A stretch of 13,065 nucleotides of DNA from Trichoplax adhaerens (GCF_000150275.1 NW_002061038.1:4777-17841); one strand, 5' to 3'; numbered from the stretch's first letter, positions 1 to 13,065 are shown. Made by a program: numbers and translations. Notes: generated by a model from the sequence alone, not told the origin.

Positions 1-465
1 TATTCTATTCTTTCACCTTTAGTGGTGATTTTACTAACATACACTAGGATCATTTCTACCAGTTATTCACATCGCCAGAGGATGAACTCATTTAATCAGA
101 AGATGACGCGTAGAAGAAGTTTGTCTATCATCATTTACGATATCAAAGCCTTACGTCAAATGGCCATCCTTCTCTGTACATTTTGCCTGGGATTTTGTCC
201 ATTTGTTATCATGTTCATTATCCAGCAAGAAAAAATTTCCGATCCAAGAACGCAAGTGCGATCAGAGGCTTTAGTTATAACCTCTTTTATTGCATTTTCA
301 TATCCAGCTCTTAATCCGCTAATGTACGGATACTTCTCGCCCGACATCAGATCTGAATGTTTTAAAGTTTTCTGTAAAATGTTTACTTTTTCGAAGTACA
401 ACTTAGAGACAACATCAACAAGCGAATACTTAAATGCTGATGTTAAAACTGTAACCTCTGTTTAA
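1..465 (+). CDS. Class A (rhodopsin-like) GPCR, 5'-truncated by the window edge (TM5, ICL3, TM6, TM7, helix 8, C-tail)
   Basis: Frame is open from base 1 (YSILSPLVVILLTYTRII, TM5 with conserved P and Y). It then has a basic ICL3, TM6 KALRQMAILLCTFCLGFCPFVI (variant of FxxCWxP), TM7 ALNPLMYGYF (NPxxY), helix 8 DIRSECFKVFC, a Ser/Thr-rich tail, and TAA at 463-465. Confidence 0.88.
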   Translation, partial: YSILSPLVVILLTYTRIISTSYSHRQRMNSFNQKMTRRRSLSIIIYDIKALRQMAILLCTFCLGFCPFVIMFIIQQEKISDPRTQVRSEALVITSFIAFSYPALNPLMYGYFSPDIRSECFKVFCKMFTFSKYNLETTSTSEYLNADVKTVTSV

Positions 466-1094
466 ACTCTAGCCTTTATAATAATTGCTAGATACTATTG
501 CTTAGATCTTTATAGTTTTTAGTTGCGTTTAGACCACTGATTGTAAATCGATTTATATTATGGGTACTAATTTTTAATAATGTTACAAAGTTGTTATGCA
601 CACACTAAGTGTTGTTAGAGAATTGTCATTTATTAAGGTATAAAACATTTTAGTTGGCTAAGTTTGCGTCTGTACATAAGCTTGTCAATGCATTTGAGAT
701 TATTTTTAGTCTTTGCAGAAACTGAATACTCGTAGTTCAATAATTATACATAATTAGTAGCGAGCGGTTTGATTGCGTGTCTCATGCAGTTGATTAACAT
801 AAGCATCAACCTCTTATATTGTAATTATGTTGCCGCGTATAGTAGTGCATGTCAGTTGGTTTTGAATTTAATATCTGATATTATAAGACTTCTTTTACTT
901 ATTTAAAATGTAATAATCATACGGTATGGTATGGTCCAGTACTCTGTACGTACAATAAAGCACACCGCAGCTGTCTTTGACTCATTCTCTCGTTCATATA
1001 ATTTTATTTCTAATTATTTCATCCATGCAAATTGTACTAACTGGCAGTGACGTGCTGAGTAAAGTTCTTTAATTAATAAACTCAATTTAGATGT

Positions 1095-1866
1095 GTACAG
1101 TACAGTACTATAGTTACGCACTAAAAATGTACTGTAAGGACGTATTGTACTGTAGAGTAGACTACGCTGTCTACATGTACTGTACAGTGTACAGTACAGT
1201 ATAACGACGCCTCGGAAATTATGCACCGCCGATTTTCGCCCTCCATAGTACTGTACAGTACAGTACTATACATTACAGTGTACTGTACTGTACTGTACAC
1301 TGTGCTCATTGAGGAAAGAAAAAAACTGTTTTTCCAACTACTGTACAGTACAGTACAGCAGAGGTTCTTTTTCCTCTCTGGACTGTACTGCACAGTATAG
1401 TACTGTACTGTACAGTACACTGTGCAGTCGACCATACGAGAATAATAAAAGTTGTTTGAATCATTGCTTACCCCTCTCACAATGTGAAACAACTTTTGCT
1501 ATTCTCGTACTGTATGGTCACAGTACAGTACAGTACAGTACACGGCCACAGTACTGTACAATACTCTACGCCAGATCAGTACCGAGTTTGATACTGTACA
1601 CTTTTAGCTGATTTGGGGTTTAGTAATAAAGTAAAGTTACTGTACAGTACTGTACATATTTCCTTCTTTTTCTGCACAAGGAGAACGAGGAAGATACTAG
1701 ATGATCATTTAATAACTTGTAAAAGAAGCGTTTATGCAATAATATATGACGTAGTCGAATCTCAATTTGCAAAACCGCTGAGATACTGTACAGTACTATT
1801 ATACAACATACATATATATACTGTATAGTGCATATTTATACTGTACTACTGTATACAGTACTGTAT
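1095..1866. repeat. Clustered TACAG/TACTG pentanucleotide arrays in both orientations, interspersed with unique sequence
   Basis: Examples: TACTGTACAGTACAGTAC at 1249-1266 and 1339-1356, (TACTG)3 at 1281-1295, and (CAGTA)4 from 1521. A perfect 24-bp inverted pair lies at 1248-1271 / 1395-1418, and a 10-bp inverted pair at 1387-1396 / 1419-1428. Confidence 0.9.
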
Positions 1867-1902
1867 GCTCGTCAGAAGTTAAATTATTATAATTATTGAG
1901 GC

Positions 1903-2687
1903 ATGGATAATAAAGAGAAATCATCCCTTGAATTGCTGTCTTACGCAGCGCATTTAGTGATGGCCCAAAATTGTAAGTTGACGATGGTTAATTATTAAAT
2001 GTAAATTTCTGCATGATGTTGCTCGATGAACTTGGTCCTTTAAATTTCATGCATTTGATTGGAAGAGTTAATGACTGCAGTAGTGATATACTACGGTCTT
2101 CAATGCGCTCTATTATGTATCGTTCTAAAGGTATACAAATTGGATATGATTCACAGCACTGTAATAATAATATTATGGAATTTCTTTTCAAATTTTATCT
2201 TGTTTTGGAATTCCTACACAGTGAAGGTAAAGTTGTAAATAACTTTAGCGAATGGCACATACGCGTATTGTACAGTAGAGTATTGTAGGATGCTGGATAT
2301 TGATTTGCACGTTGCATTCCAATGTATCTGTTCGCAACTTAGCTCTTGCCCGAATCTAAATCTAATAGATGGGTGAACTATGCAGTACGCCGGGAATTAG
2401 AATACGAACCATCGGAGTCTTTTATGGAAGACGATATTAAACACTTTATGAAATTGATCCGCGAACTGCTAATGAGGTTAAAAGATCTTGGGGGTTGTAT
2501 CTTATTGCTCAATAAAGAGTTTAATCATTGTTAGGCGCTTTTGACGCTGCCAATGAGTCTTAATAATAATAATAATCTACTGTGTGTGCATAAAGTAAAA
2601 GACGATTTTTTTGTAATACCATCACGGCAAAACGGAGAGTGGGAGAGAAAAAACTATGCATACTTCCGGAATCAGCGTACAGTGTAG
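1903..2687 (+). pseudogene. Decayed intronless ORF, possibly a divergent protein-kinase-like (pseudokinase) C-lobe
   Basis: ATG at 1903. ORF pieces 2013-2288 and 2346-2534 are in one frame, which stays open again from 2535 to 2687. A +1-frame bridge at 2278-2376 (EYCRMLDIDL...) spans three of the stops. The order LEFLHSEG...HIRV...MLDID...DDIKHFMKLIRELL mirrors kinase subdomains VIa, VIb, VII and IX. AATAAA at ~2724. Confidence 0.35.
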
Positions 2688-5379
2688 ATAGTCTTCATCA
2701 CTTTAAAAGTGTGAAAGAACTTTAATAAAAAATCTCAATCTCTAAACTGCTAAACTCTATACTTACTGTACGTATAGAAATTTCCACGTCCATCACTATG
2801 CGGGTTTAGATTGGCTAGCATACGTATAATGTACAATTTGGCAGGTTGCTTTGACAGATCAATGTTATTACTAGGTAGCCCTCGTCAACATGAGATACAA
2901 GATTTACGATTTGCTGTATCGGATTCACCATTGAATTTTTTTCTCTCTACTATGATATTGTACTTTAGACTTATCGAGTCTATCGTGTACGGTACTATAC
3001 TGTAACGTGGAACGCAGATTAAGCTGTGCTGAATCGAACAAGAACCAGTTCCCAGTGAAAAATCGAAATCCCGAAAGGTTCTTGCTTCAGAACGTCTTGA
3101 AGGATCTAGAACCTTTACAGATCTAGTTATGCGAAACAGTCGTTACTAATTGTAATAGTTACTTACAATTAATAATTTTGGTAAATGAGCATAGATATCA
3201 AATTTTTGCCATAGGAATTACATTAGTTTATTCCCACCAAAGCTGTATACAGTACAGAAAAGATCCAAACACCTACAGTAGCATTGATAGCCGAAGCTTA
3301 AGTTGTGTTTTGAACATACGGAAATTACATGCTAATGGTGCATTAACAGAATTTACGCGTGTGTTCTACATTTATGTAGTACAGTACAGTAGTACCAGAG
3401 AATGCTGCATCCTCTAGTAATCCCCGATTGTGTTCCATATCTTAAGTGTTTATGCCGTCGGAAGGTATTAGTTTATCATATTTTATCTCCTCTAATTCTA
3501 AAAATTGATAAATTAAGCTCAGTTGATTAATTTACAGTTAACAATTTCCAAGCAGTCATATTTACGTCGCAATCTTACTACCGATTTTGGGAATCCGCTA
3601 ATTTTTTTGTACGTGTACTGTATTTAAGTCTTTATTTAGGCTTGATTATTAATTACTGTTTGTGGAACTGTAACATTGACACGTAATACTTTGCAAATGC
3701 GAATACGAAGTATAATATTCCGGTACAGCCAAATGCTAGGCACATCAACCTCGAGAGTGGATTTTGATCTACTACAGTATGTGTACTACGCATTGGTTCT
3801 ATTTCGCTTTCAGCAGTTTTATTTCTTTCATTAATATTCTGCAATTATTGCACTGTACGTATACTGTTGTATTACACTTAACCCTTTATGCCCAGATGAC
3901 GGTTATATAACGCCGATTCTTTACCATAATTTTCTTGATATTTATCGTAATTTCGTAACATTTAATGGATATGACTGGGCTCAGTATACGACTATGGGCT
4001 TTAACTAGCAAAGTATTGTTCTTGACGTCAATACAGTCTACAATGCGATTTATTCCGCTTCTACGAGTAGGTAAAATGTTCCTGTTAATACTAAATTTAA
4101 TTATTTTAATTTAGCTTAGTTTACAATCTACAGGTTAAGTTATTGTAATGTCTCTCATAATCAGTTTAGGTAATATACTTGCATGTAGAGTAATGCCTCA
4201 TCTGTTCTTATTGATAATATAGCGTTCAGTCTACCTAAGGGTCAAGCCTGAGATGCTTTCAGTAGCATCGTTAGTACGTCTGAAATTTTTATTGTTATGC
4301 TGCATTTAGCAGACATTAGGATGGTATGCAATTAATTACGAACACGAAGCTGTAAAAGAATATACTGTTCGCTTTGACACATGTTCGTCATAGCTGTTGC
4401 AATTACAATAGACAATGAAGGCAGATATTGCGAACAGCACAGTAATCCGGTATATTATGTTCAGTATATAATGTTATAGATAAAAATCTAATAATTATAT
4501 ATGTAAATATAGTTGATCAGATTATTCATTTACTACATTCATATGTACCTTATATTGACAGTGAATAATAATTACATGCTATATTACTACATAGATGAGG
4601 TTAATCTTTACAGTACTGTACATATTAATTCATGAAAATTTTCAACCTATATAGTGTCGAGCGCTACAATAATTCTACTACATGCAGCTATTTCATTGTT
4701 GGCAATCTACTGATGTATGTGCTACTACTGTCTCTTAATTTGCGCGTTACATTGTACTGTTAGAATAAAAACACGTAATAAACATACGTGATAATTCGCT
4801 TACTAAACACATCATTACCCTCGATTTGAATTATTTCAACGGCTGCGACGTGATTACTAAACAGTGACCGTTCTTGCACTATTCATCATGCATTAATGCC
4901 GCTATCACTGGGTGTCACACTTTCACACCACTTACAGAACAGAAACGTATGATTTCTGCAACTAATACGGCTATCATTCTGTACCTATCATATTCCTTAG
5001 TTACTCTTTTAGCTTTAATAATGTGATGGTTTAACGTAACAATTTTCTTGAATTACTCTCTGGTTAGCATAATTGCGTAGATTACTTCCATTTATCTATA
5101 GTCAGTTTCAGATCGCAGGGACTCGATCTATCTTGACGCTGAGTATATATATGTATAGTGAAAGAATGGTCGTTCTGCTAGTGAGAAACTGTGAAACTAT
5201 TTCAAAGCTGTGACGATGTAATCGGTGATATAAGGGTTATTCATCCACGCAAGAAAGATGACGCTCGCAATTTGATATAAACTTTGACTTTATTATCTTA
5301 GTATAAGCAGCAGTTAAATATCTAAGTATATACTTCTATAGTAGGTACTGTATTGACCAACTCGGAAGTTACACAGTAA

Positions 5380-5628
5380 ATAGAGGATTTTACAACCGCA
5401 GAACTTATGCAATGGATTACTGGAAGTAAAGTAACACCATTACTTGGGTTTAATATGAAAATATCGGTTTCTTTTGTATATGTATGTTCAGAAGGTTGTC
5501 GGTTTCGTCCTACTGCATCGAGATGTGATCTTACTTTTAGATTGCCAACTCATATTCACACATTAGAGAATATGAGACAGATGATGAAGTCTGCTGTAGA
5601 GGACTGCATTGGTTTAGGTGTTATATGA
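5380..5628 (+). pseudogene. HECT E3 ubiquitin ligase C-lobe (G2E3-like); terminal exon or fragment
   Basis: IEDFTTAELMQWITGSKVTPLLGFNMKISVSF...RPTASRCDLTFRLPTH...MMKSAVEDCIGLGVI*. This matches the HECT C-lobe pattern L.F.TG...P..GF, PxAxTC (catalytic Cys), LxLP and terminal GFG. In-frame TAA at 5377-5379, candidate splice acceptor near 5341-5344, and no N-lobe recognised upstream. Confidence 0.78.
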
Positions 5629-5827
5629 AAGCAATTTTATGTATCAACGTAGATTAACTTATATACGAATGGTCGTTTTATTATATTTCTTAATTTGCTA
5701 AAAGGTACAGTATTATGAGTTATTTCAAGTTGCATGTATAATGCTGTAGCAATACTTGTGCGATAACTGAGTAAGGATTTGTTGCATTAATGTTAATCTT
5801 TCATTTTGTCGTTATAAAATAGCAGTA

Positions 5828-5859
5828 AATAAAACTACAGATTTGAAATCAGTTTTATT
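5828..5859. terminator. Convergent polyadenylation signals between the HECT and transposase genes
   Basis: AATAAA on + at 5828-5833 and AATAAA on - (TTTATT) at 5854-5859, located between the two stop codons. The AT-rich context lowers specificity. Confidence 0.4.
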
Positions 5860-5997
5860 GCGTTTATGAAGAAACTAGACAGATCATATTACAGTACTAA
5901 TATCAATCAACAATAAATTTGCATTAGTAGGATAACTGACGTTCACTTATACCGTATGTATCTAAACAATCCGGCGTAATCTAAAAGCTTGGGCACT

Positions 5998-7432
5998 CTA
6001 GTGCCCAGTAGCAAAAGCGGTCAATTTCTAAAATAAAGTGAACGCCTCAGGTATTGTAGATGGTAACTGTAATTCCTCATTAGACATAGTCAAAATATTC
6101 GACATGCATAGATCCGGTATTTTCACCGATGTCTTCCGAATTGACGTTTCGCTCCATCTCAGTAATCATGGGAGCACTTACGCGTTCCATACAATTATAA
6201 GCTTCAAAACGATGGGGCAAATAGTACATAATATCAGGCACGCCCGAGACCACATTTGTCCTAGAGCGCCTGATTCGGTGCGAGTTCCACTGATCCTTAA
6301 CCATATCAAGCTCGTCTTGAAGAATAGATTCAAAGCAGAAATGTAGGCATTCTGTATGAAAGGTATTATTTACGCTTAGTATACTGCATTGTACCATATC
6401 CTTAAAGAGATCAATCCACCAGCCAGCTCTGTGCCGACGATAGAATGACCACCAGCTTTCGATGCGTTGGTTCGCTGGTGATGTACCATATCTGCGTGCG
6501 TTGTTACCGGCAAACGGATCTCTCCCTAATTGACGAAAATAACATTGAATAGAAGCTAATAGATTGTTTCCCGCACCACAGTCGCTTCTGACAATCATAA
6601 GACATCCAGAATATTTTTTTGCGCATTTAAGATAAAGAGATGCTATAATTTCTGGCTTATTACTTGATCGACGGCATTCTAATCAAAGAATTTTTCGACT
6701 ATAACCGTCAATACATCTGTGAATGGGAAAGCCATATGGCTTTAGCTTATCAAAGCAGAACAATAGAATGTTTAGTGTAAGAAAATATGTAAGATCTGCG
6801 TATTAAAGCGCTACATTACCGATTAATCACAATTACAAGCCAAACGAATTCTATTAGTAGCATACCAATTGAGGATTTAGAATCAACAACCATTAGCGAT
6901 AGAATAAAACATTTTTTATCGATAGGAGGAATAAAGCATTCGTAGTACTACATGATAATATTATTGTTGCTAGAAAATTACAGGTTATATTAGGTGTATA
7001 ACTTCTATCATATTATTCTTACCATCGATATGCCAACAAAAATTTGGACCATAACTTATATATCTTCTTCTACTAAATCTCTTTCGACTTCGTAATAGTA
7101 TTCCTTTTGGATTGATCTCTTTCATGATACGTGCCACTACATCTCTTGGAATGCATATGTGATGCTCCAATCTGAGCATGTGCCAAATAGTCCTATAACC
7201 ACATCTTTCGCCAGAATAGCTCAATAACAAGCCGAATTATATCTTTTAGCTCTTCTTCGTCATATCCCTGGCTTCTGCGTAAGTTATAGGCTTTCAGTCT
7301 CCGCTTTAGTGTTCGTTCACCGATGTTAATTGAATGATAGTTTCTCAGAAATTCAATGATAACATTATTTTGTAATCCGCGGTAGAAATAGTTTTCGATA
7401 TAGCATTTTAGACAATCCTGCTCTTCCTGCAT
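5998..7432 (-). pseudogene. DDE transposase/integrase (IS3/integrase-core-like, IS3EU-type) with N-terminal HTH; two exons, inactivated
   Basis: Exon 1 (7432-7023) has IENYFYRG...ERTLKRRLKAYNLRR, a frameshift at ~7230, then GYRTIWHMLR...RRRYISYGPNFCWHIDG. Exon 2 (6756-5998) reads FDKLKPYGFPIHRCIDGYSRKIL*LEC...VRSDCG...GTSPANQRIESWW...WNSHRIR...GVPDIMY...EYFDYV. After a frameshift at ~6082 it continues NEELQLPSTIPEAFTLF*KLTAFATGH*. The putative triad is D(WHIDG), D(RSDCG), E(NQRIE). A TGA at 6685-6683 sits at the expected Trp. Confidence 0.88.
6757..7022 (-). other. 266-nt phase-1 spliceosomal intron in the transposase; 3' AG missing
   Basis: The minus-strand donor G|GTAAGA splits the Gly of WHIDG. 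A branch-like CACTAAAC and a pyrimidine tract (ATTCTATTGTTCT) precede GC TTT GAT AAG. Joining restores WHIDGFDKLKPYGF, but no AG is present at the acceptor. Confidence 0.75.
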
Positions 7433-7479
7433 CTTGCAATAGTTAATTTACTTACTACAGTTAGCTGTAATTAAAATGA

Positions 7480-7752
7480 GGACCGCGCTGTACTGTAGAC
7501 TGTGGTGCACCATGGAGTCGGTCGCCGCGCCGCGTGAAAACATATAATTGTATAAGCTAAATCAGACCCAAACTAGATAAATTCTATATTTGGTTGTAGC
7601 CTAATAACCCAGGAATGCCAGTTTGGTTCTTATTTCTCTAGATATTCTATACTTTTCCCGTAAGATTGGTCAGAAGCTTGAAATGACTACAGTACGCGTA
7701 TGTCCCGCCCATACTCAGATAATGCACAGTGTTACCTAATAATATGGCGCGT
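7480..7752. promoter_or_regulatory. CpG-richer putative promoter region upstream of the transposase
   Basis: CG-rich patch at 7480-7536, CCAAT on - (ATTGG 7665-7669), GC box CCCGCCC at 7704-7710 and ATGGCG at 7744-7749, all in an otherwise AT-rich background between two divergent ATGs (7432 on -, 7843 on +). Confidence 0.3.
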
Positions 7753-7842
7753 AATTTAAAATTCTGTAAAAATTTTTTTTGAGGTACTGTGCTACTCCGT
7801 ATACACACTTTTTTTCGTCTTTTTTGTGCTTAGTCTGACAGT

Positions 7843-8092
7843 ATGTTGACAGTACAGCAAAGAACTTTCATGGTTGTCCTTATGGCAGAACATAAGAGCC
7901 CCAGCGTGGCCAGAAGATGCTTCCTGCAAGAGTATCCTAGGATATCTACAAAGTCGCATCGTACAACTTTTATGAAGGTGTAAGAAATTTCTTGCAACTG
8001 GATCCGTGTTGAGAAGACCAACACCTGAGCGAAAGTCTCTTATGCCCGAGAGAGTACCTAAATGTAAATATATGGTATTTGTGTATGTGTAA
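7843..8092 (+). pseudogene. Tc1/mariner-type transposase N-terminal HTH fragment (DUF4817-like), frameshifted
   Basis: MLTVQQRTFMVVLMAEHKSPSVARRCFLQEYPRISTKSHRTTFMKV* (7843-7983), then in the +1 frame KKFLATGSVLRRPTPERKS (from 7982). The QR.F.V / RR.F...Y / KF..TGSV pattern is typical of this HTH. It is absent from the supplied ORF track, and no catalytic domain follows. Confidence 0.7.
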
Positions 8093-8412
8093 TTACCTAA
8101 ATTTAGTACTTCAATAAATACTGCGGAACTCTAATTGTCAATTTGGCTTACTTTCAATGTGTACTCATATACTGTAATTTGCATGCCTTAATATAGTAAG
8201 AACTGATCTGATTATTTCAGCTAATTTCCAGCCTGTACTTGGCATGATATCATTACTGAGTAAGTAATTGCATAAAGTAGACGCTATATCATTGTCAGTT
8301 ACGAATAAAACGAAATATTTTGATGCAATAAAGAAGATATTCCATTTTTAAATCATGGCAGCCGTGTAACATAATGCGTTCAATTCTTTTTGGTACGCTA
8401 TTTTTGAATCAG

Positions 8413-8447
8413 TAAACTATGACGTAATGCCATTACGTCATAGTTTA
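8413..8447. repeat. Perfect 17-bp inverted repeat with 1-nt spacer
   Basis: TAAACTATGACGTAATG-C-CATTACGTCATAGTTTA; the arms are exact reverse complements. Confidence 0.95.
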
Positions 8448-9637
8448 TACAGTACTACATTTCTCCAAAAAGCACTATGGACCACCCAAACACTACTGTA
8501 AAATAACTGTCCGCCATTAAAACGATTTTTTTACTATCTATTGACATAGTACGTTTATGTTATCATGATAATCTATCTTGGGAGATATCCTTCTATGGGT
8601 ATATATAAATACTATACAGGAATTTCAACGGAATACAACTTTGATTTTTTAAGGAAGAAGGAGACATCGAAAATAATCACGCTGTAGATAAGCCGTAAAT
8701 AGTACTGTACGATATCTAGGATTCTTCACGTTCTATGGCGCGTACACTACAATAGAACTAGCTGTAGTTTACAGCACAGGCAATGTTACGACAGAGGCGA
8801 GACAATTGTAACAGTAGTCGATTTTACGATACTGTGCAACCGACAAGAGCGATTCTAATTTAAATATTAGTCAAATGTACATTGAAAAAAGGTACGAAGG
8901 AATGTCGATATTACAGTTATCTATATGATAATAACATTATACCAGTCGTCATAGTTCTCTACTATCTCCTTAAAGAGTCTGTAGAGAAAGTTATTTCAGT
9001 TTTATTTACGTACAAGCATCTTGGAATGCTTATACAATGACGAATTAAAGACAAAGATGAGAGCGATTTAATTAAACTGAATCTGTCGGGAGATTAATTT
9101 CATACGATTTGCAAAAAAATTCATTTCTCGTAAATAGTGATCGTTAATAACCTATTCGTATTGAGCTTCAAATAGGAATCGATATACATGCATATGGAAT
9201 TCAGTAGCTTGCTTGGTACAGTATCTTTCTTTACAATACTTAGGGCACTGGTACTTAGCGTTCTCAGAATTAGACTTAAGAAAGGTTCAGTTGGGTGCAA
9301 GTCTGAAACTTTATAGCGTTCGAGTTGAATTTTTTAACATGAATGGAAATACTATTTATGTTCAGGTTTCGCACGTATTCATGGTCGCGTTTACTATGCA
9401 AGAAATAACTTACAAAGCTTGACAAAAAATATAATCGTAGATGAAATGCCTGAACTAAGAGGTGAAGAATAGTTTACATTAATCTATTTGCATCTACCTC
9501 AAGTAAAGAAAGTTTTGCAAATAAGTTTGCTTAGTTACTTGTACAAATATTGGTATTCAAGAGAGTTAAGGAGATAAAAAAATCTATATACATATAATAT
9601 AAATATATATATTATCTCACTGCACCCGACCATATTA

Positions 9638-9780
9638 AGGTGTGTTCACACGAGCGATGAAAACACAGCGACCCGCGACGAGCGACGAGTCCAGTGATTG
9701 CAGTCAAATCTTTATGACGTCACTCGTCGCTCCTCGCTGAAATATTTCGGCGACGAGCGACGGGCGATGAGTGAAGTCAT
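9638..9780. mobile_element. Single terminus of a PIF/Harbinger-like non-autonomous element with GCGACGA subterminal repeats
   Basis: TTA/TAA followed by (A)GGTGTGTTCACACGAGCG resembles animal Harbinger termini. Repeated GCGACGA-type heptamers follow in both orientations, with an imperfect palindrome at 9714-9780. No partner terminus was seen. Confidence 0.45.
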
Positions 9781-9784
9781 ATTT

Positions 9785-9985
9785 ACGCAGCTTACTTTTA
9801 TAGGTGTGTGTGTGCGCTTATTTACAGTACAAAGTTATAAACTGCAAATTACTGTAGCATAGAAAATGTTTGTAAAATTATACTCAAGAAAGCGAACAAT
9901 ACAGTACAATATCTTATCTGAAATGTGTGTGCGCTGCCCACCACACCTGACTCTGTCACGCAACTTACTTTTATAGGTGTGTGTG
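9785..9985 (+). repeat. 28-bp direct repeat pair, 173 bp apart
   Basis: ACGCAGCTTACTTTTATAGGTGTGTGTG (9785-9812) and ACGCAACTTACTTTTATAGGTGTGTGTG (9958-9985), one mismatch. Confidence 0.9.
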
Positions 9986-11006
9986 CTTTACATACTGGTA
10001 TACTGCAATACAAAAGTAACGAACTATATTGTAGATCGGTGGAGAAAACGAGTATATACGTATGTACGGTATGTAGTAAACTAATTTACTGTACTGTACT
10101 GTATAATATCCTATTATTACATAAAGGAATGTGAAAATTTTTCAACATGAAACATACATTAAATGTCAGATATTGCGCAATACAACTTTATGTAGTATGA
10201 GTATGTAGAAAACATGTTAAGCAAGTGAAAAACGGAAAATTTTATGTCATTTACACTAGATATTTTATTCAGTACAGAGCAGAGCGTGTTCGGAATGTGT
10301 TGCCTCAATATGTAATTGCATACACTCGTAAAGTACAGCAATGCAAACTGTTGCATAAATTTCGAACTATTTAATTTATATTCAAATGTACGTAAGTTCA
10401 ACATTGTTAACAAGCAGTATATGACCTGTTTGGGAGCGCATCAACACGGCGTCGTTAACGTGATAAAATTGCGTGACGCGCTCATTGCGATATTTTTCAT
10501 TATCGTAAAAAGCCGAGCACATCATTAATCTAAAATAGCGGGAATACAGTCGTACAGAGACCGCAGCGCGCCTTTTAAAAACGGGATCTGAATAAGGTAA
10601 AGTACCACAAAGCATAATTCCATACGATTCATGGCATATTAGGTTCTGTGATAAGGATCTCTATTCGAAATACCCTGAATCGTCATCCCTACCCTAAATG
10701 CCCGATATAATTGCGTATATATTGTGCTACTGCGAGGTAGCTGTTTGTAAAGAGTGCTACCGCTTCACTAATCAGGTAGAGTCTAGGATCGATTACGTCA
10801 GCCATATTTTATCGGTTTGTAGGCAGTTCATTTTGGTATATTAGCAAAATTAAAGATTTGATTTCGTCTTTCTTTTGTTCTAAATTTTAGACTTTAACAT
10901 CAATTTCCGTTTTAGCAACAGTTCGATAAGTAAAGACCACTTCTACTATCTAACCAATTAGTTATTTTGTAATAATGTCAAATAACTTTATACTTTAATT
11001 GGAAGT

Positions 11007-11049
11007 ATCTGAAATTAGGTAACTTAACTGTAAAAATCTGAAATTAGGT
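11007..11049 (+). repeat. 14-bp exact direct repeat
   Basis: ATCTGAAATTAGGT at 11007-11020 and 11036-11049. Confidence 0.85.
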
Positions 11050-12209
11050 TTTTGGTGAAACACAATCAGAACCTGTAGTATAAGGTGAAAATAATATCGA
11101 TTAGTATAAGTTTGATGTTACGAGGGTGAATTGAATACTTTGCAGAGTTCGATCCTATTCAGCATAAAATTAATCTAATAAAGCAGTGTCTTGTTTTGAT
11201 ATTATGAGAGTGGATTGAATACTTTACAGCGTACAATTCCAGACTGCATAATTTAATTTAATGCGGCAAATTATCCAGTTTCGAAAAAGAACGGCACTCG
11301 ACACTATCGCTATTATTGCGCACGCAAGTTACTACTGTATCATTTAGTATCACTATATATATAGATATAGCAATAATCGTATTGTTAACCAACCGTAAGA
11401 ATTTACTGTCTGCCTGTCAAGATTAAATGAAAGCAATATATGAAATAGAATTGAATTTAAAGTTCCACTTATCACAATCTTCTAAACTACCAAAAGTGAA
11501 TGTACACTACTGTACATGCTGTACTCTAATTGATTAAATTATATTATTTTATACTGTATATATAATACATTAATTAATTTAATTAATAATTCACCGTCTT
11601 ATAACTCGAAAACTCTTTATGCATCACGATAAATTGTGATGAACTTTGTAGAATTTATGATATAAAGATAATATCAAAAATGTTTTCTTTTATCAACATC
11701 AGCTTTGATAATATAATTATGCATCATCAGAAAAACCGCGATTTAACAGGATTTGTATAAAAATTAGTGATGTCGGAAAATTTTAAATATAAACTAGATG
11801 TGCGAGCGAGACTTTCTTCCTCGTTTTTTACACGATAAGATCCGCAGGCTTCGTTGTAGATTTTAGTTTAAGTTGCACAAACTATTTTTAAGTTGTTTTA
11901 ATAACAATTCAGTAAAAATATAGAAATTTCTTAAATAGGTTTTAGTATGAACTTCCACTCTAACGTAGCAGCATTCATTTCATGCACGCTTCATACAGTA
12001 TCCTATCGCTTACATTACAATAGTAACTGTTGCTTAGATTTAGTTATCCTTACAATTATACTGATTATCGTAAATCTAGCCAAGAAATTCTTATTAGTCA
12101 TGATACCAATATACATCGACTAGATTAACATGATGGTACATAAAGTAAAAAAATCAGTTAGGTACGCGAGTACAATACGAGCAATGGGTGCACATGACAT
12201 CTTCAACGG

Positions 12210-12231
12210 GCGTATTTAAATTTAAATACGC
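12210..12231. repeat. Perfect 22-bp palindrome
   Basis: GCGTATTTAAATTTAAATACGC is self-complementary. Confidence 0.9.
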
Positions 12232-13065
12232 TTGGGTACATTTAATTATAAATAAATTGTTCTAACAACGAAATTATATAAATAAGAAAATCCAGGACAT
12301 AATAATATCTAAGCTCCTAAATTTTACTTACTACTATCAAGAATAAAAGATTGTGAGACCTTATAAATATTTTTACTGTCATGTCACGACTTTTTGATTT
12401 ATGTATACTGTACAACAAAAACGTTTAAGTGCCTGTAACAATTTTACTTTGATATACAAAAAATGCAGGTTGTAATAGACTAATATTAGAAAGGCGATCG
12501 ATTTTACGTTTAGACAGACACTCGACAAGCAAAAACATCGTAGAAAATTAAGCAACCTTTTAAATCGACTCATAGTATACCACCTGATAAATTTAAGAAT
12601 GATTCACTGTTTAGATACGTACGACGTGATAACTGATTCAAGGCCGAAATGGACCAGTCAACATTCGAATTCCGTTTTGGTATTTAGAAGGAGTATTTTA
12701 AGAAAGCTACTAATATACATCTGCGACAAAAACTGCTAGGTTAAGGGATAAATGTAACTACGCCTCATGAAAGTGGTTTACTTATTTAAAATCCTAGTGC
12801 ATTGAGAGAGTATATGGGAATTTTAGTTAGAATTATTTCGTAACATTGCAAGTGATTGCTTGCTTACATTTTTACCTAGAAATTATTTTACTTTTCGTAT
12901 TTCAGAGCTTTATTATGTAGACATCACTTTTTTTGTTTATGGTTAAATTACCCACTTTACTGCTTTATACCTTCATAAATTTAAACATAGATAATTAAAA
13001 GGAAATAATGAAAATTAGTGTTTCATAGTATTGTGGTTCCGCTCAACTTCCAGATTAATAGAAAA

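What the first reader, a model, noticed from the sequence alone, without database searches (positions are those of the whole stretch)
5342..7801. DNA transposon apparently pairing an IS3-like DDE transposase with a HECT ubiquitin ligase
Seen: a DDE transposase gene (-) and a HECT C-lobe (+) end 370 bp apart, tail to tail, with AATAAA signals facing each other at 5828-5859, and both carry inactivating changes. Known: HECT ligases use the Cys in the PxAxTC motif, and several eukaryotic DNA transposon superfamilies carry a second gene (Zisupton elements carry ubiquitin/SUMO-system domains). From memory, IS3EU elements encode two proteins. Inference: the HECT gene is transposon cargo and not a host neighbour. 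That would be a mobile element with its own E3 ligase, possibly to degrade host silencing factors or regulate the transposase. I know of no functional characterisation of such a pairing.
Basis: partly seen in the sequence, partly recalled or inferred. Interest (0 to 1): 0.8.

Follow-up and report, generated by a model that had tools for sequence, protein, structure and literature searches.

The report
Dead two-gene IS3EU transposon with HECT ligase
This stretch of the Trichoplax genome is the broken remnant of an IS3EU-type jumping gene, and intact relatives in corals and other animals carry the same pair of genes (a transposase and their own HECT ubiquitin ligase) between their terminal repeats, a pairing I could not find described in the searchable literature.

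Summary
Window 5380-5628 (+) is a HECT C-lobe. Window 6080-7432 (-) is an IS3EU/GingerRoot-type transposase (Pfam rva_4 plus HTH_21). They are convergent, and both are broken.

Every relative of this transposase that I fetched carries a convergent five-exon HECT gene: Stylophora, Desmophyllum, Xenia, Priapulus and three unnamed ENA assemblies. A carp element has a borderline HECT.

In five families, long terminal inverted repeats (TIRs) enclose both genes. They end in TACGG..CCGTA and are flanked by 6-bp target duplications. One family has 10 fetched copies. Most are over 99% identical across the element, so the two genes move together.

The intact ligase reads: zinc ribbon, ubiquitin-like domain, Rad18-like ubiquitin-binding zinc finger, then a full HECT domain with an invariant catalytic Cys.

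The Trichoplax copy is a lone relic:
- Only the last HECT exon survives.
- The transposase has a stop, a frameshift, a lost splice acceptor and a catalytic E-to-G change.
- No termini remain.
- The whole 3.9-kb segment is absent from the other haplotype.
- About 75 IS3EU end motifs elsewhere in the genome point to past activity.

What the ligase does is untested.

The parts
5380..5628 (+). Last exon (HECT C-lobe, 82 codons plus stop) of the element's second gene. It is the only surviving exon. The catalytic Cys is kept in RPTASRCD, but T to R at position -1, H to Y, G to V, C to F and the -4 Phe to Leu hit conserved positions.
   Evidence: Pfam HECT E 1.3e-5. It is 40-49% identical to the last HECT exon of IS3EU elements L001, L002, L003, L008 and L015, at E 1e-19 to 1e-25 for the first four. 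Alignment A1. No other exon is found in the window or the rest of the scaffold.
5629..6079 (.). A 451-bp spacer between the two convergent stop codons, with AATAAA at 5828-5833(+) and 5854-5859(-).
   Evidence: Sequence. The same spacer is 107-956 bp in the relatives. The hexamers are at chance level for this base composition.
6080..6754 (-). Transposase exon 2: the DDE catalytic core (rva_4). It has an in-frame TGA at 6683-6685, the catalytic Glu replaced by Gly, and a truncated C-terminus.
   Evidence: It is annotated in part as TRIADDRAFT_62526 (P0001).
6755..7022 (-). Relic of the conserved transposase intron. The donor G|GTAAG (GT at 7022-7021) is intact. The acceptor AG seen in relatives is gone.
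   Evidence: L008 and L002 end exon 1 with the same GATG|GTAA donor, and L001 and L002 start exon 2 after ..ag|G(C/T)TA(C/T) GAT AAA. P0048 and P0058 read WH(L/I)DGYDKLKP across the join.
7023..7230 (-). Transposase exon 1, second reading frame: the HTH_21 domain and the first catalytic Asp (WHIDG).
   Evidence: Pfam HTH_21 E 2e-7. Alignment with P0018 and P0058.
7196..7432 (-). Transposase N-terminus (79-codon ORF from the ATG at 7432-7430). It is out of frame with the HTH part, so a frameshift lies near 7210-7228.
   Evidence: A weak Clr5-like HTH hit, E 0.034.
7433..7534 (-). Upstream (5') region of the transposase gene. It is cut off at 7534/7535, where a fragment of an unrelated repeat family begins. 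No terminal repeat or terminus survives.
   Evidence: Window 7421-7517 is about 80% identical to C1410:2283834-2283936. There the first four transposase codons run directly into an IS3EU end..CGGCCACCGTA. No terminus motif occurs in the window at up to 3 mismatches. No flanking inverted repeat is found.
4992..8934 (.). A 3,943-bp presence/absence segment that contains the whole relic plus other TE fragments. It is absent from the allelic scaffold C1410, and a 3-bp CAT is shared at both junctions.

Best explanation
Window ~5380-7534 is a truncated, pseudogenised relic of a two-gene IS3EU/GingerRoot DNA transposon in Trichoplax adhaerens. Intact elements of this lineage are 6-8 kb long. They have 175-411-bp terminal inverted repeats that begin with TACGGTGGCCCAnAAGGGnCA, and they make 6-bp target duplications. 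Between the repeats lie two convergent genes. The first is an intron-containing transposase (HTH plus rva_4 DDE). The second is a five-exon gene for a ~680-aa HECT E3 ligase with this order of domains: zinc ribbon, ubiquitin-like beta-grasp domain, Rad18-type CCHC ubiquitin-binding zinc finger, complete HECT domain. So the HECT fragment in the window is the last exon of the element's own second gene, not a host neighbour. This much is shown. What follows is inferred. The ligase is a transposon-encoded accessory factor kept by selection. My preferred guess is that its UBZ finger brings it to ubiquitin-marked chromatin or repair sites, where it ubiquitinates a host factor or the transposase complex during or after integration. 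In Trichoplax the element is dead. Only short end-motif-bearing derivatives remain elsewhere in the genome, and the relic itself has been lost from one haplotype.
For: Identity of the pieces. The organism is Trichoplax adhaerens (P0001 is TRIADDRAFT_62526). The pairing recurs in every relative fetched: L001 and L002, Stylophora L003, 10 copies L004-L013, Xenia L014, Desmophyllum L015 and Priapulus L027. All five exons are found by tblastn with the same exon boundaries on P0101. Both genes lie inside one mobile unit. L008 spans 8586-16471 with perfect 338-bp TIRs. Its copies are mostly over 99% identical across the shared stretch. Perfect 6-bp TSDs flank 6 of 8 copies examined. TIRs and TSDs also enclose both genes in L001, L002, L003 and L014. 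The termini match the TAYGG..CCRTA ends and 6-bp TSDs published for IS3EU (PMC10045372, PMC12730594). The ligase is intact and conserved in relatives. P0101 has HECT positions 35-305 of 306 at E 2.3e-11. The catalytic Cys is invariant across 8 sequences. The GEPAIDDGGPRREFF N-lobe motif and the CPxC..H...C finger are conserved in 55 sequences. In the AF2 model, residues 70-190 have pLDDT 94-98, and the top Foldseek hits are almost all ubiquitin-like folds. The window's HECT piece matches these transposon ligases (E 1e-19 to 1e-25) and no Trichoplax HECT gene. It is real Trichoplax DNA: scaffold C1319 is colinear with C1410 at 94-99%. The genome holds 75 copies of the terminus motif against 0 for the control.
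Against: The window itself has no TIR, no terminus motif and no TSD, so membership of this particular copy rests on protein homology and gene order alone. Only 7 families plus one distant fish element were sampled. They were chosen from the hits of one word-based search, so 'always paired' is a small-sample statement. The trees of the two genes are poorly resolved: only L002+L003 is supported in both. The correlation of pairwise identities (r 0.62) uses non-independent pairs. In Priapulus the pieces are scrambled in a gappy draft scaffold. The fish second ORF is only borderline HECT: Pfam E 1.3e-4, below the cut-off, and hhalign E 0.056. Nothing here tests ligase activity or its target.
Confidence: 0.9

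Rival explanations
1. The neighbours are there by chance. On this reading the HECT piece is a decayed fragment of a Trichoplax host HECT gene, or an unrelated pseudogene, that happens to lie next to a dead transposase.
For: The window holds only one HECT exon and no transposon ends. The Trichoplax genome has many HECT matches (57 exon-level hits).
Against: The piece matches no other place in the genome even at E up to 1. It matches the last exon of the transposon-borne ligases at 40-49% identity, in the same orientation and at a similar distance from the transposase stop, in seven other families. The segment is dispensable, being absent from the other haplotype.
Confidence: 0.03
2. The pairing is real, but the ligase is a counter-defence or self-regulation factor rather than a repair or integration cofactor. 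In one version it marks host silencing or restriction proteins for degradation. In the other it ubiquitinates the transposase to limit its activity.
For: E3 ligases are used for counter-defence by viruses (from established knowledge). Fungal IS3EU carry TET/JBP genes that are interpreted as anti-silencing cargo (PMC12730594). The ligase's N-terminal ubiquitin-like and ubiquitin-binding modules are compatible with many kinds of target.
Against: There is no evidence for any particular substrate. The Rad18-type CCHC finger is best known from DNA-damage-tolerance proteins (my knowledge, not tested here), which leans weakly towards the repair-site reading. The Pfam UBZ hits are below threshold.
Confidence: 0.4
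3. The HECT gene is a recent, lineage-restricted capture of a host G2E3-like gene by one cnidarian IS3EU subclade, and not an ancestral component. On this reading the Trichoplax relic came by horizontal transfer from such an element.
For: Most named hosts are cnidarians. Sources label some copies 'G2/M phase-specific E3 ubiquitin-protein ligase-like'. Fungal IS3EU carry a different second gene, an alpha-kinase (PMC12730594).
Against: The pairing spans transposases as far apart as 44-78% identity, and hosts in Cnidaria, Placozoa and Priapulida. A distant fish element also has a convergent ORF with a HECT-like C-lobe and an RPxxxTC motif. The exon structure of the ligase gene is the same in all families. 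No PHD or RING fingers of the G2E3 type are found.
Confidence: 0.15

Closest known systems
IS3EU superfamily of eukaryotic DNA transposons (Repbase; Kojima & Bao 2023, PMC10045372), same lineage as GingerRoot (Cerbin et al. 2019, PMC6839031)
   Same: The transposase is of the same type (IS3/integrase-like DDE without an HHCC finger). TSDs are 6 bp. Termini are TA..TA, and the TACGG..CCGTA ends seen here match the TAYGG..CCRTA reported for fungal IS3EU. TIRs are long. GingerRoot was already reported in coral, sea anemone and fish.
   Different: In the papers I could search, neither source mentions a HECT or ubiquitin gene: there were 0 occurrences in PMC10045372, PMC12730594, PMC6839031 and PMC11934779. 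[quoted passage not shown] Repbase entries themselves could not be read, so the second ORF may be recorded there.
Fungal IS3EU elements with passenger genes (alpha-kinase, TET/JBP dioxygenase; Kojima 2025, PMC12730594)
   Same: These have the same superfamily and end motif. They also carry a second gene in the opposite orientation to the transposase, inside the TIRs. That is a precedent for enzyme cargo in IS3EU.
   Different: The second gene there is an alpha-kinase, with or without TET/JBP. Here it is a UBL-UBZ-HECT ubiquitin ligase, and it is found in animal hosts.
G2E3 (G2/M phase-specific E3 ubiquitin-protein ligase) and the many 'G2E3-like' gene models in fish and cnidarians
   Same: A HECT domain sits at the C-terminus. 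NCBI and UniRef name some copies of the transposon ligase 'G2E3-like' (P0147, P0162). The nearest ESM Atlas clusters include one with that name.
   Different: No PHD or RING-like fingers are detected. The N-terminus is instead a zinc ribbon, a ubiquitin-like domain and a UBZ-type finger. No direct comparison with true G2E3 was made.
DNA transposons carrying ubiquitin-like-system enzymes (Ulp1/SUMO-protease domains in Zisupton and in plant MULE/CACTA elements). This comparison comes from my own knowledge and was not checked here.
   Same: In both cases a cut-and-paste transposon keeps a second enzyme of the ubiquitin/SUMO system.
   Different: Those enzymes are deconjugating cysteine proteases. 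This one is a conjugating HECT ligase with its own ubiquitin-binding module.

Membership tests
IS3EU/GingerRoot DNA transposons | IS3/integrase-like DDE transposase (rve/rva_4 fold) with an N-terminal HTH and no HHCC finger | tested here: met
   rva_4 at E 3e-12 (8.3e-20 when read through the stop) and HTH_21 at E 2e-7. The core is 44-58% identical to transposases of elements with IS3EU ends. The catalytic Glu is mutated in this copy.
IS3EU/GingerRoot DNA transposons | Terminal inverted repeats with TA..TA (TAYGG..CCRTA) termini | tested here: not met
   The window copy has no motif at up to 3 mismatches and no flanking inverted repeat. The ends are lost: one side is cut at 7534/7535 and the other upstream of 5380. 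The feature is met in relatives L001, L002, L003, L008, L014 and L016. The motif is present 75 times elsewhere in the Trichoplax genome.
IS3EU/GingerRoot DNA transposons | 6-bp target site duplication | tested here: inconclusive
   It cannot be read for the window copy because no ends remain. It is met in relatives: 6 of 8 copies examined in the L004-L013 family, plus L001, L002 and L014, with a 5/6 match in L003. The 3.9-kb indel around the relic has only a 3-bp shared CAT.
HECT E3 ubiquitin ligases | C-lobe with the catalytic Cys | tested here: met
   Pfam HECT positions 231-304 of 306, above the cut-off. The Cys aligns with the invariant Cys of 7 relatives. Neighbouring conserved residues are mutated.
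HECT E3 ubiquitin ligases | N-lobe (E2-binding) preceding the C-lobe | tested here: not met
   It is absent from the window and the rest of scaffold C1319. It is present in intact relatives: P0101 covers HECT 35-305 of 306, and the GEPAIDDGGPRREFF motif is conserved.
G2E3 family | N-terminal PHD/RING-like zinc fingers followed by a HECT domain | tested here: not met
   Pfam finds no PHD or RING domain in P0101, P0114, P0122 or P0147. It finds only a zinc ribbon and sub-threshold zf_UBZ hits.
G2E3 family | HECT domain closer to true G2E3 than to other HECT subfamilies | not tested
   Only source names and an Atlas feature match of 0.95-0.96 point this way. No G2E3 sequence was available by reference.

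The most novel reading that the evidence does not exclude
Animal IS3EU/GingerRoot transposons as a group depend on a self-encoded HECT ubiquitin ligase (zinc ribbon, UBL, Rad18-type UBZ, HECT). This ligase would couple transposition to the host's ubiquitin-dependent chromatin or repair signalling. It would be the first transposon-borne HECT E3. Many 'G2E3-like' gene models in fish and cnidarian genomes would then be copies of this transposon gene rather than host genes.
Probability: 0.3. Interest if true: 0.8.

Novelty: new variant of a known kind. Interest (0 to 1): 0.6.

Why it matters
DNA transposons that keep a second enzyme show which host pathway the element has to manipulate. A conserved HECT ligase with its own ubiquitin-binding finger, inside the terminal repeats of an element spread across animal phyla, would be a new type of transposon accessory protein. 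It is also directly testable. One assembly holds copies that are mostly over 99% identical, with perfect 338-bp TIRs and open reading frames, so a natural active element is at hand. There is a practical side too: 'G2E3-like' and 'HECT domain-containing' gene models in coral and other invertebrate genomes that sit next to rva_4 genes are probably transposon genes and should be masked. For Trichoplax, the result identifies the only transposase remnant of a family whose end motifs are still scattered through the genome. It also documents a 3.9-kb haplotype difference.

Tried and rejected
1. Other exons. I looked for further HECT exons in the window and in the first 4.8 kb of the scaffold by tblastn, using all exons of L001 and L008 and then P0101. 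None turned up, even at E up to 50.

2. Ends in the window. I looked for TIRs and for the terminus motif and found none. I rejected it as a terminus.

3. The 160-bp multi-copy repeat at 7535-7694. I tested whether it could be the IS3EU TIR. Its other copies have different flanks, and they continue into window 8500-8686, so it is a different element.

4. Literature. Searches on IS3EU, GingerRoot, G2E3 with transposon, and HECT with TIR and transposase found no description of the pairing. Kojima's 2019 review is not held.

5. Fish element. The Pfam hit is below its cut-off and hhalign gives E 0.056, so I count it as a hint only.

6. Gene trees. Both are too poorly resolved to test co-phylogeny.

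7. P0147 could not be located on a contig.

8. MITE-like copies in Trichoplax (L022, L023). Their target duplications could not be verified.

9. Steps not run. Complex prediction was not sent, because gene neighbourhood alone is not reason enough. The 1.84-billion-protein search was not used, because the family scans had already settled what the proteins are.


Full report
**What the window is.** The 200-codon open frame at 6083-6682(-) is 100% identical to TRIADDRAFT_62526 of Trichoplax adhaerens (P0001). The window is bases 4777-17841 of the 17.8-kb scaffold C1319 in a 105.6-Mb assembly. It is not human and not viral.

**Checking the observation.**
- Pfam places 5380-5625(+) in the HECT C-lobe, profile positions 231-304 of 306, E 1.3e-5, above the curated cut-off.
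- Pfam places 6083-6598(-) in rva_4 (integrase core, PF24764) and 6988-7230(-) in HTH_21.
- The two genes are convergent.
- The two AATAAA hexamers exist but are at chance level in 33% GC DNA.

**State of the transposase, read on the minus strand.**
- An N-terminal ORF runs 7432-7196.
- A frameshift near 7210-7228 leads into the HTH part.
- Exon 1 ends with WHIDG, the first catalytic Asp, followed by an intact donor G|GTAAG (GT at 7022-7021).
- A 268-bp intron relic follows. Its acceptor AG, present in relatives, is gone.
- Exon 2 runs 6754-6080. It has an in-frame TGA at 6683-6685.
- The catalytic Glu is replaced: relatives read RTDCGTENG, the window reads RSDCGAGNN.
- About 30 C-terminal residues are missing.

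**State of the HECT piece.** It keeps the catalytic Cys (RPTASRCD). Five positions that are invariant or nearly so in relatives are changed, including the Phe at -4 from the C-terminus.

**Copy number in Trichoplax.** Both pieces are single-copy in this genome.

**The pairing in other genomes.** A word search with the transposase core returned 92 proteins, all but one with a precomputed rva_4 assignment. The closest were about 55% identical, and several were named from corals. I fetched the genomic surroundings of seven independent relatives. Each has a convergent gene ending in a HECT C-lobe a few hundred bases beyond the transposase stop:
- L001 and L002 from ENA assemblies. Pfam scores the last exon as HECT at E 8.5e-9 and 6.7e-9.
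- L003 from Stylophora pistillata.
- L004-L013, ten copies from two ENA assemblies.
- L014 from Xenia sp..
- L015 from Desmophyllum pertusum.
- L027 from Priapulus caudatus, fragmentary in a gappy scaffold.

By tblastn, the second gene has five exons, and their boundaries fall at the same positions of the full-length model P0101 in every family. I compared exons one by one by reference. I built no joined spliced model.

**Both genes lie inside one mobile element.**
- The ten fetched copies L004-L013 share one element. Most are over 99% identical across it, for example L008:8586-16471, 7.9 kb. L007 and L012 are truncated or interrupted.
- That element has perfect 338-bp terminal inverted repeats.
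- Its termini read TACGGTGGCCCAGAAGGG...CCGTA.
- Perfect 6-bp target duplications flank six of the eight copies I examined.
- TIRs of 175-411 bp with the same 21-nt end motif also enclose both genes in L001, L002, L003 and L014.
- Their target duplications are GTTAGG (L001), GAGAAG (L002), ATATGG (L014) and ATGTAG/ATGTGG (L003).

These are the hallmarks published for IS3EU: TA..TA termini, 6-bp TSDs, and TAYGG..CCRTA in fungal families (PMC10045372, PMC12730594). IS3EU forms one lineage with GingerRoot, which was already reported from coral, anemone and fish (PMC6839031).

A much more distant element in the carp Culter alburnus (L016) also has TACGG ends. It has a convergent 671-codon ORF with a borderline HECT C-lobe: Pfam E 1.3e-4, below the cut-off, and hhalign colinear but at E 0.056. 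I count this as a hint only.

**Co-divergence of the two genes.** Pairwise identities of the two genes across eight loci rise and fall together (r 0.62), but the pairs are not independent. In the maximum-likelihood trees, only L002+L003 is supported for both genes. There is no conflict, but little power.

**What the second protein is.** P0101 (677 aa, a spliced model from EukProt) shows the intact architecture:
- An N-terminal zinc ribbon.
- A domain at about residues 70-190, predicted with pLDDT 94-98. Its top Foldseek matches are almost all ubiquitin-like beta-grasp folds (UAF1 SLD, USP7 UBL, LC3, RAWUL, ISG15, UFM1), at E 1e-3 to 2e-2.
- A conserved CPxC...H...C beta-beta-alpha finger at 259-278. 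It resembles Rad18-type ubiquitin-binding zinc fingers. The Pfam zf_UBZ hits are below threshold, and the resemblance to Rad18 is from my own knowledge.
- A complete HECT domain, Pfam positions 35-305 of 306, E 2.3e-11.

Some database sources call copies 'G2/M phase-specific E3 ubiquitin-protein ligase-like', and the ESM Atlas puts the HECT part near a cluster of that name. No PHD fingers are present, so I do not file the protein under G2E3.

**The Trichoplax copy in context.**
- No other HECT exon exists in the window or in the rest of the scaffold.
- The window has no TIR and no terminus motif.
- At 7534/7535 the transposase's upstream region abuts a fragment of another repeat family. That family spans 7535-8686 here, and internally deleted copies of it are scattered in the genome.
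- Scaffold C1319 is colinear with C1410:2402895-2415564 at 94-99% identity, so it is the other haplotype of that region.
- Window 4992-8934, which holds the whole relic and the neighbouring TE fragments, is missing from C1410. A 3-bp CAT is shared at both junctions.
- A block made of several unrelated decayed TE fragments is unlikely to have inserted in one step. I therefore infer a microhomology-mediated deletion in the C1410 allele. This polarity is not proven.
- The genome still carries 75 matches to the 21-nt IS3EU end motif, against 0 for the reversed control.
- In one derivative on C1410, the transposase's upstream region and its first four codons run straight into an element end.

So the family was once active in this lineage, and the window holds its only transposase remnant.

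**How it most likely works.** It is shown that the transposase and the ligase gene travel together between IS3EU ends in several animal phyla, and that the ligase's catalytic Cys and domain order are conserved. It is inferred that the ligase is an accessory factor under selection for the element's benefit. My preferred reading (about 35%) is that the UBZ finger takes it to ubiquitin-marked chromatin or repair intermediates at the transposition site. Counter-defence, or control of transposase levels, together have about 40%. Nothing here discriminates between these readings.

**Novelty.** IS3EU/GingerRoot is known, and fungal IS3EU are known to carry a second, oppositely oriented gene (an alpha-kinase, sometimes with TET/JBP; PMC12730594). 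None of the IS3EU and GingerRoot papers whose text I searched for these words mentions HECT or ubiquitin, and no other search found the pairing described. One of them states that IS3EU structure and function are largely unexplored (PMC11934779). Repbase entries could not be consulted and may record the ORF. I therefore rate the pairing as a new variant of a known kind, and the Trichoplax locus itself as a dead member of it.

Noticed in passing
window 1-13065 against G000:C1410:2402895-2415564: Scaffold C1319 is an alternative haplotype of part of the 8.6-Mb scaffold C1410, colinear in reverse at 94-99% identity. Besides the 3.9-kb difference at 4992-8934, a second 1,070-bp segment (window 9569-10638) is absent from C1410. 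The TACAG-rich stretch at 1040-1420 does not align.
   Followed up: partly
window 7535-8686: A fragment of another repeat family lies here. Other copies join window ~7640 directly to ~8500, with constant outer ends and variable inner breakpoints, which is the pattern of internal-deletion derivatives of a DNA transposon. There are at least 40 copies. In other loci the left end extends about 21 nt further (..gattattttcgatggcaccc). The window copy contains a 46-codon ORF at 7843-7983 that looks to me like the N-terminal HTH of a transposase, but it has no Pfam hit.
   Followed up: partly
Trichoplax genome, e.g. L023 (C1407:455116-455269) and L022 (C1410:2283200-2284600): The genome holds 75 matches to the IS3EU end motif TAYGGTGGCCCAnAAGGGnCA, against 0 for the control. 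Some bound MITE-like units of 70-155 bp, often with doubled ends. The L023 unit has TACTG/TACAG arrays inside it. Arrays of that kind, such as those noted at window 1095-1866, might therefore be MITE-internal microsatellites rather than excision footprints. Target duplications could not be verified.
   Followed up: partly
window 22-465 (+): This is the C-terminal part of a rhodopsin-family GPCR (Pfam 7tm_1, E 4.8e-10, with an NPxxY-like NPLMY). It is the only evident host coding sequence in the window.
   Followed up: no
window 2600-2763 and 8683-8796: Two further short dispersed repeats, with about 17 and about 12 copies in the genome at 71-91% identity.
   Followed up: no
L009, L012, L013 (ENA ERZ25067868 / ERZ25067548): Several copies of the active IS3EU family sit inside or beside Polinton/Maverick-like gene sets (DNA_pol_B_2, Pox_A32 ATPase, Pox_VLTF3, rve with chromodomain). 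In L012 such a gene set replaces the element from 12480 onwards.
   Followed up: no
HECT C-lobe of the transposon ligases (alignment A1; window 5380-5625): A cluster HGC-x3-C-x-C-RP just before the catalytic Cys is conserved across these ligases: the cysteine before R-P is the only exception, changed to F in the window copy, and the His and Gly are also lost there (Y, V). This could be a small metal-binding site particular to this HECT subfamily.
   Followed up: no
window 8413-8447: A perfect 17-nt palindrome with a 1-nt centre (TAAACTATGACGTAATG / CATTACGTCATAGTTTA) lies inside the unrelated repeat element.
   Followed up: no
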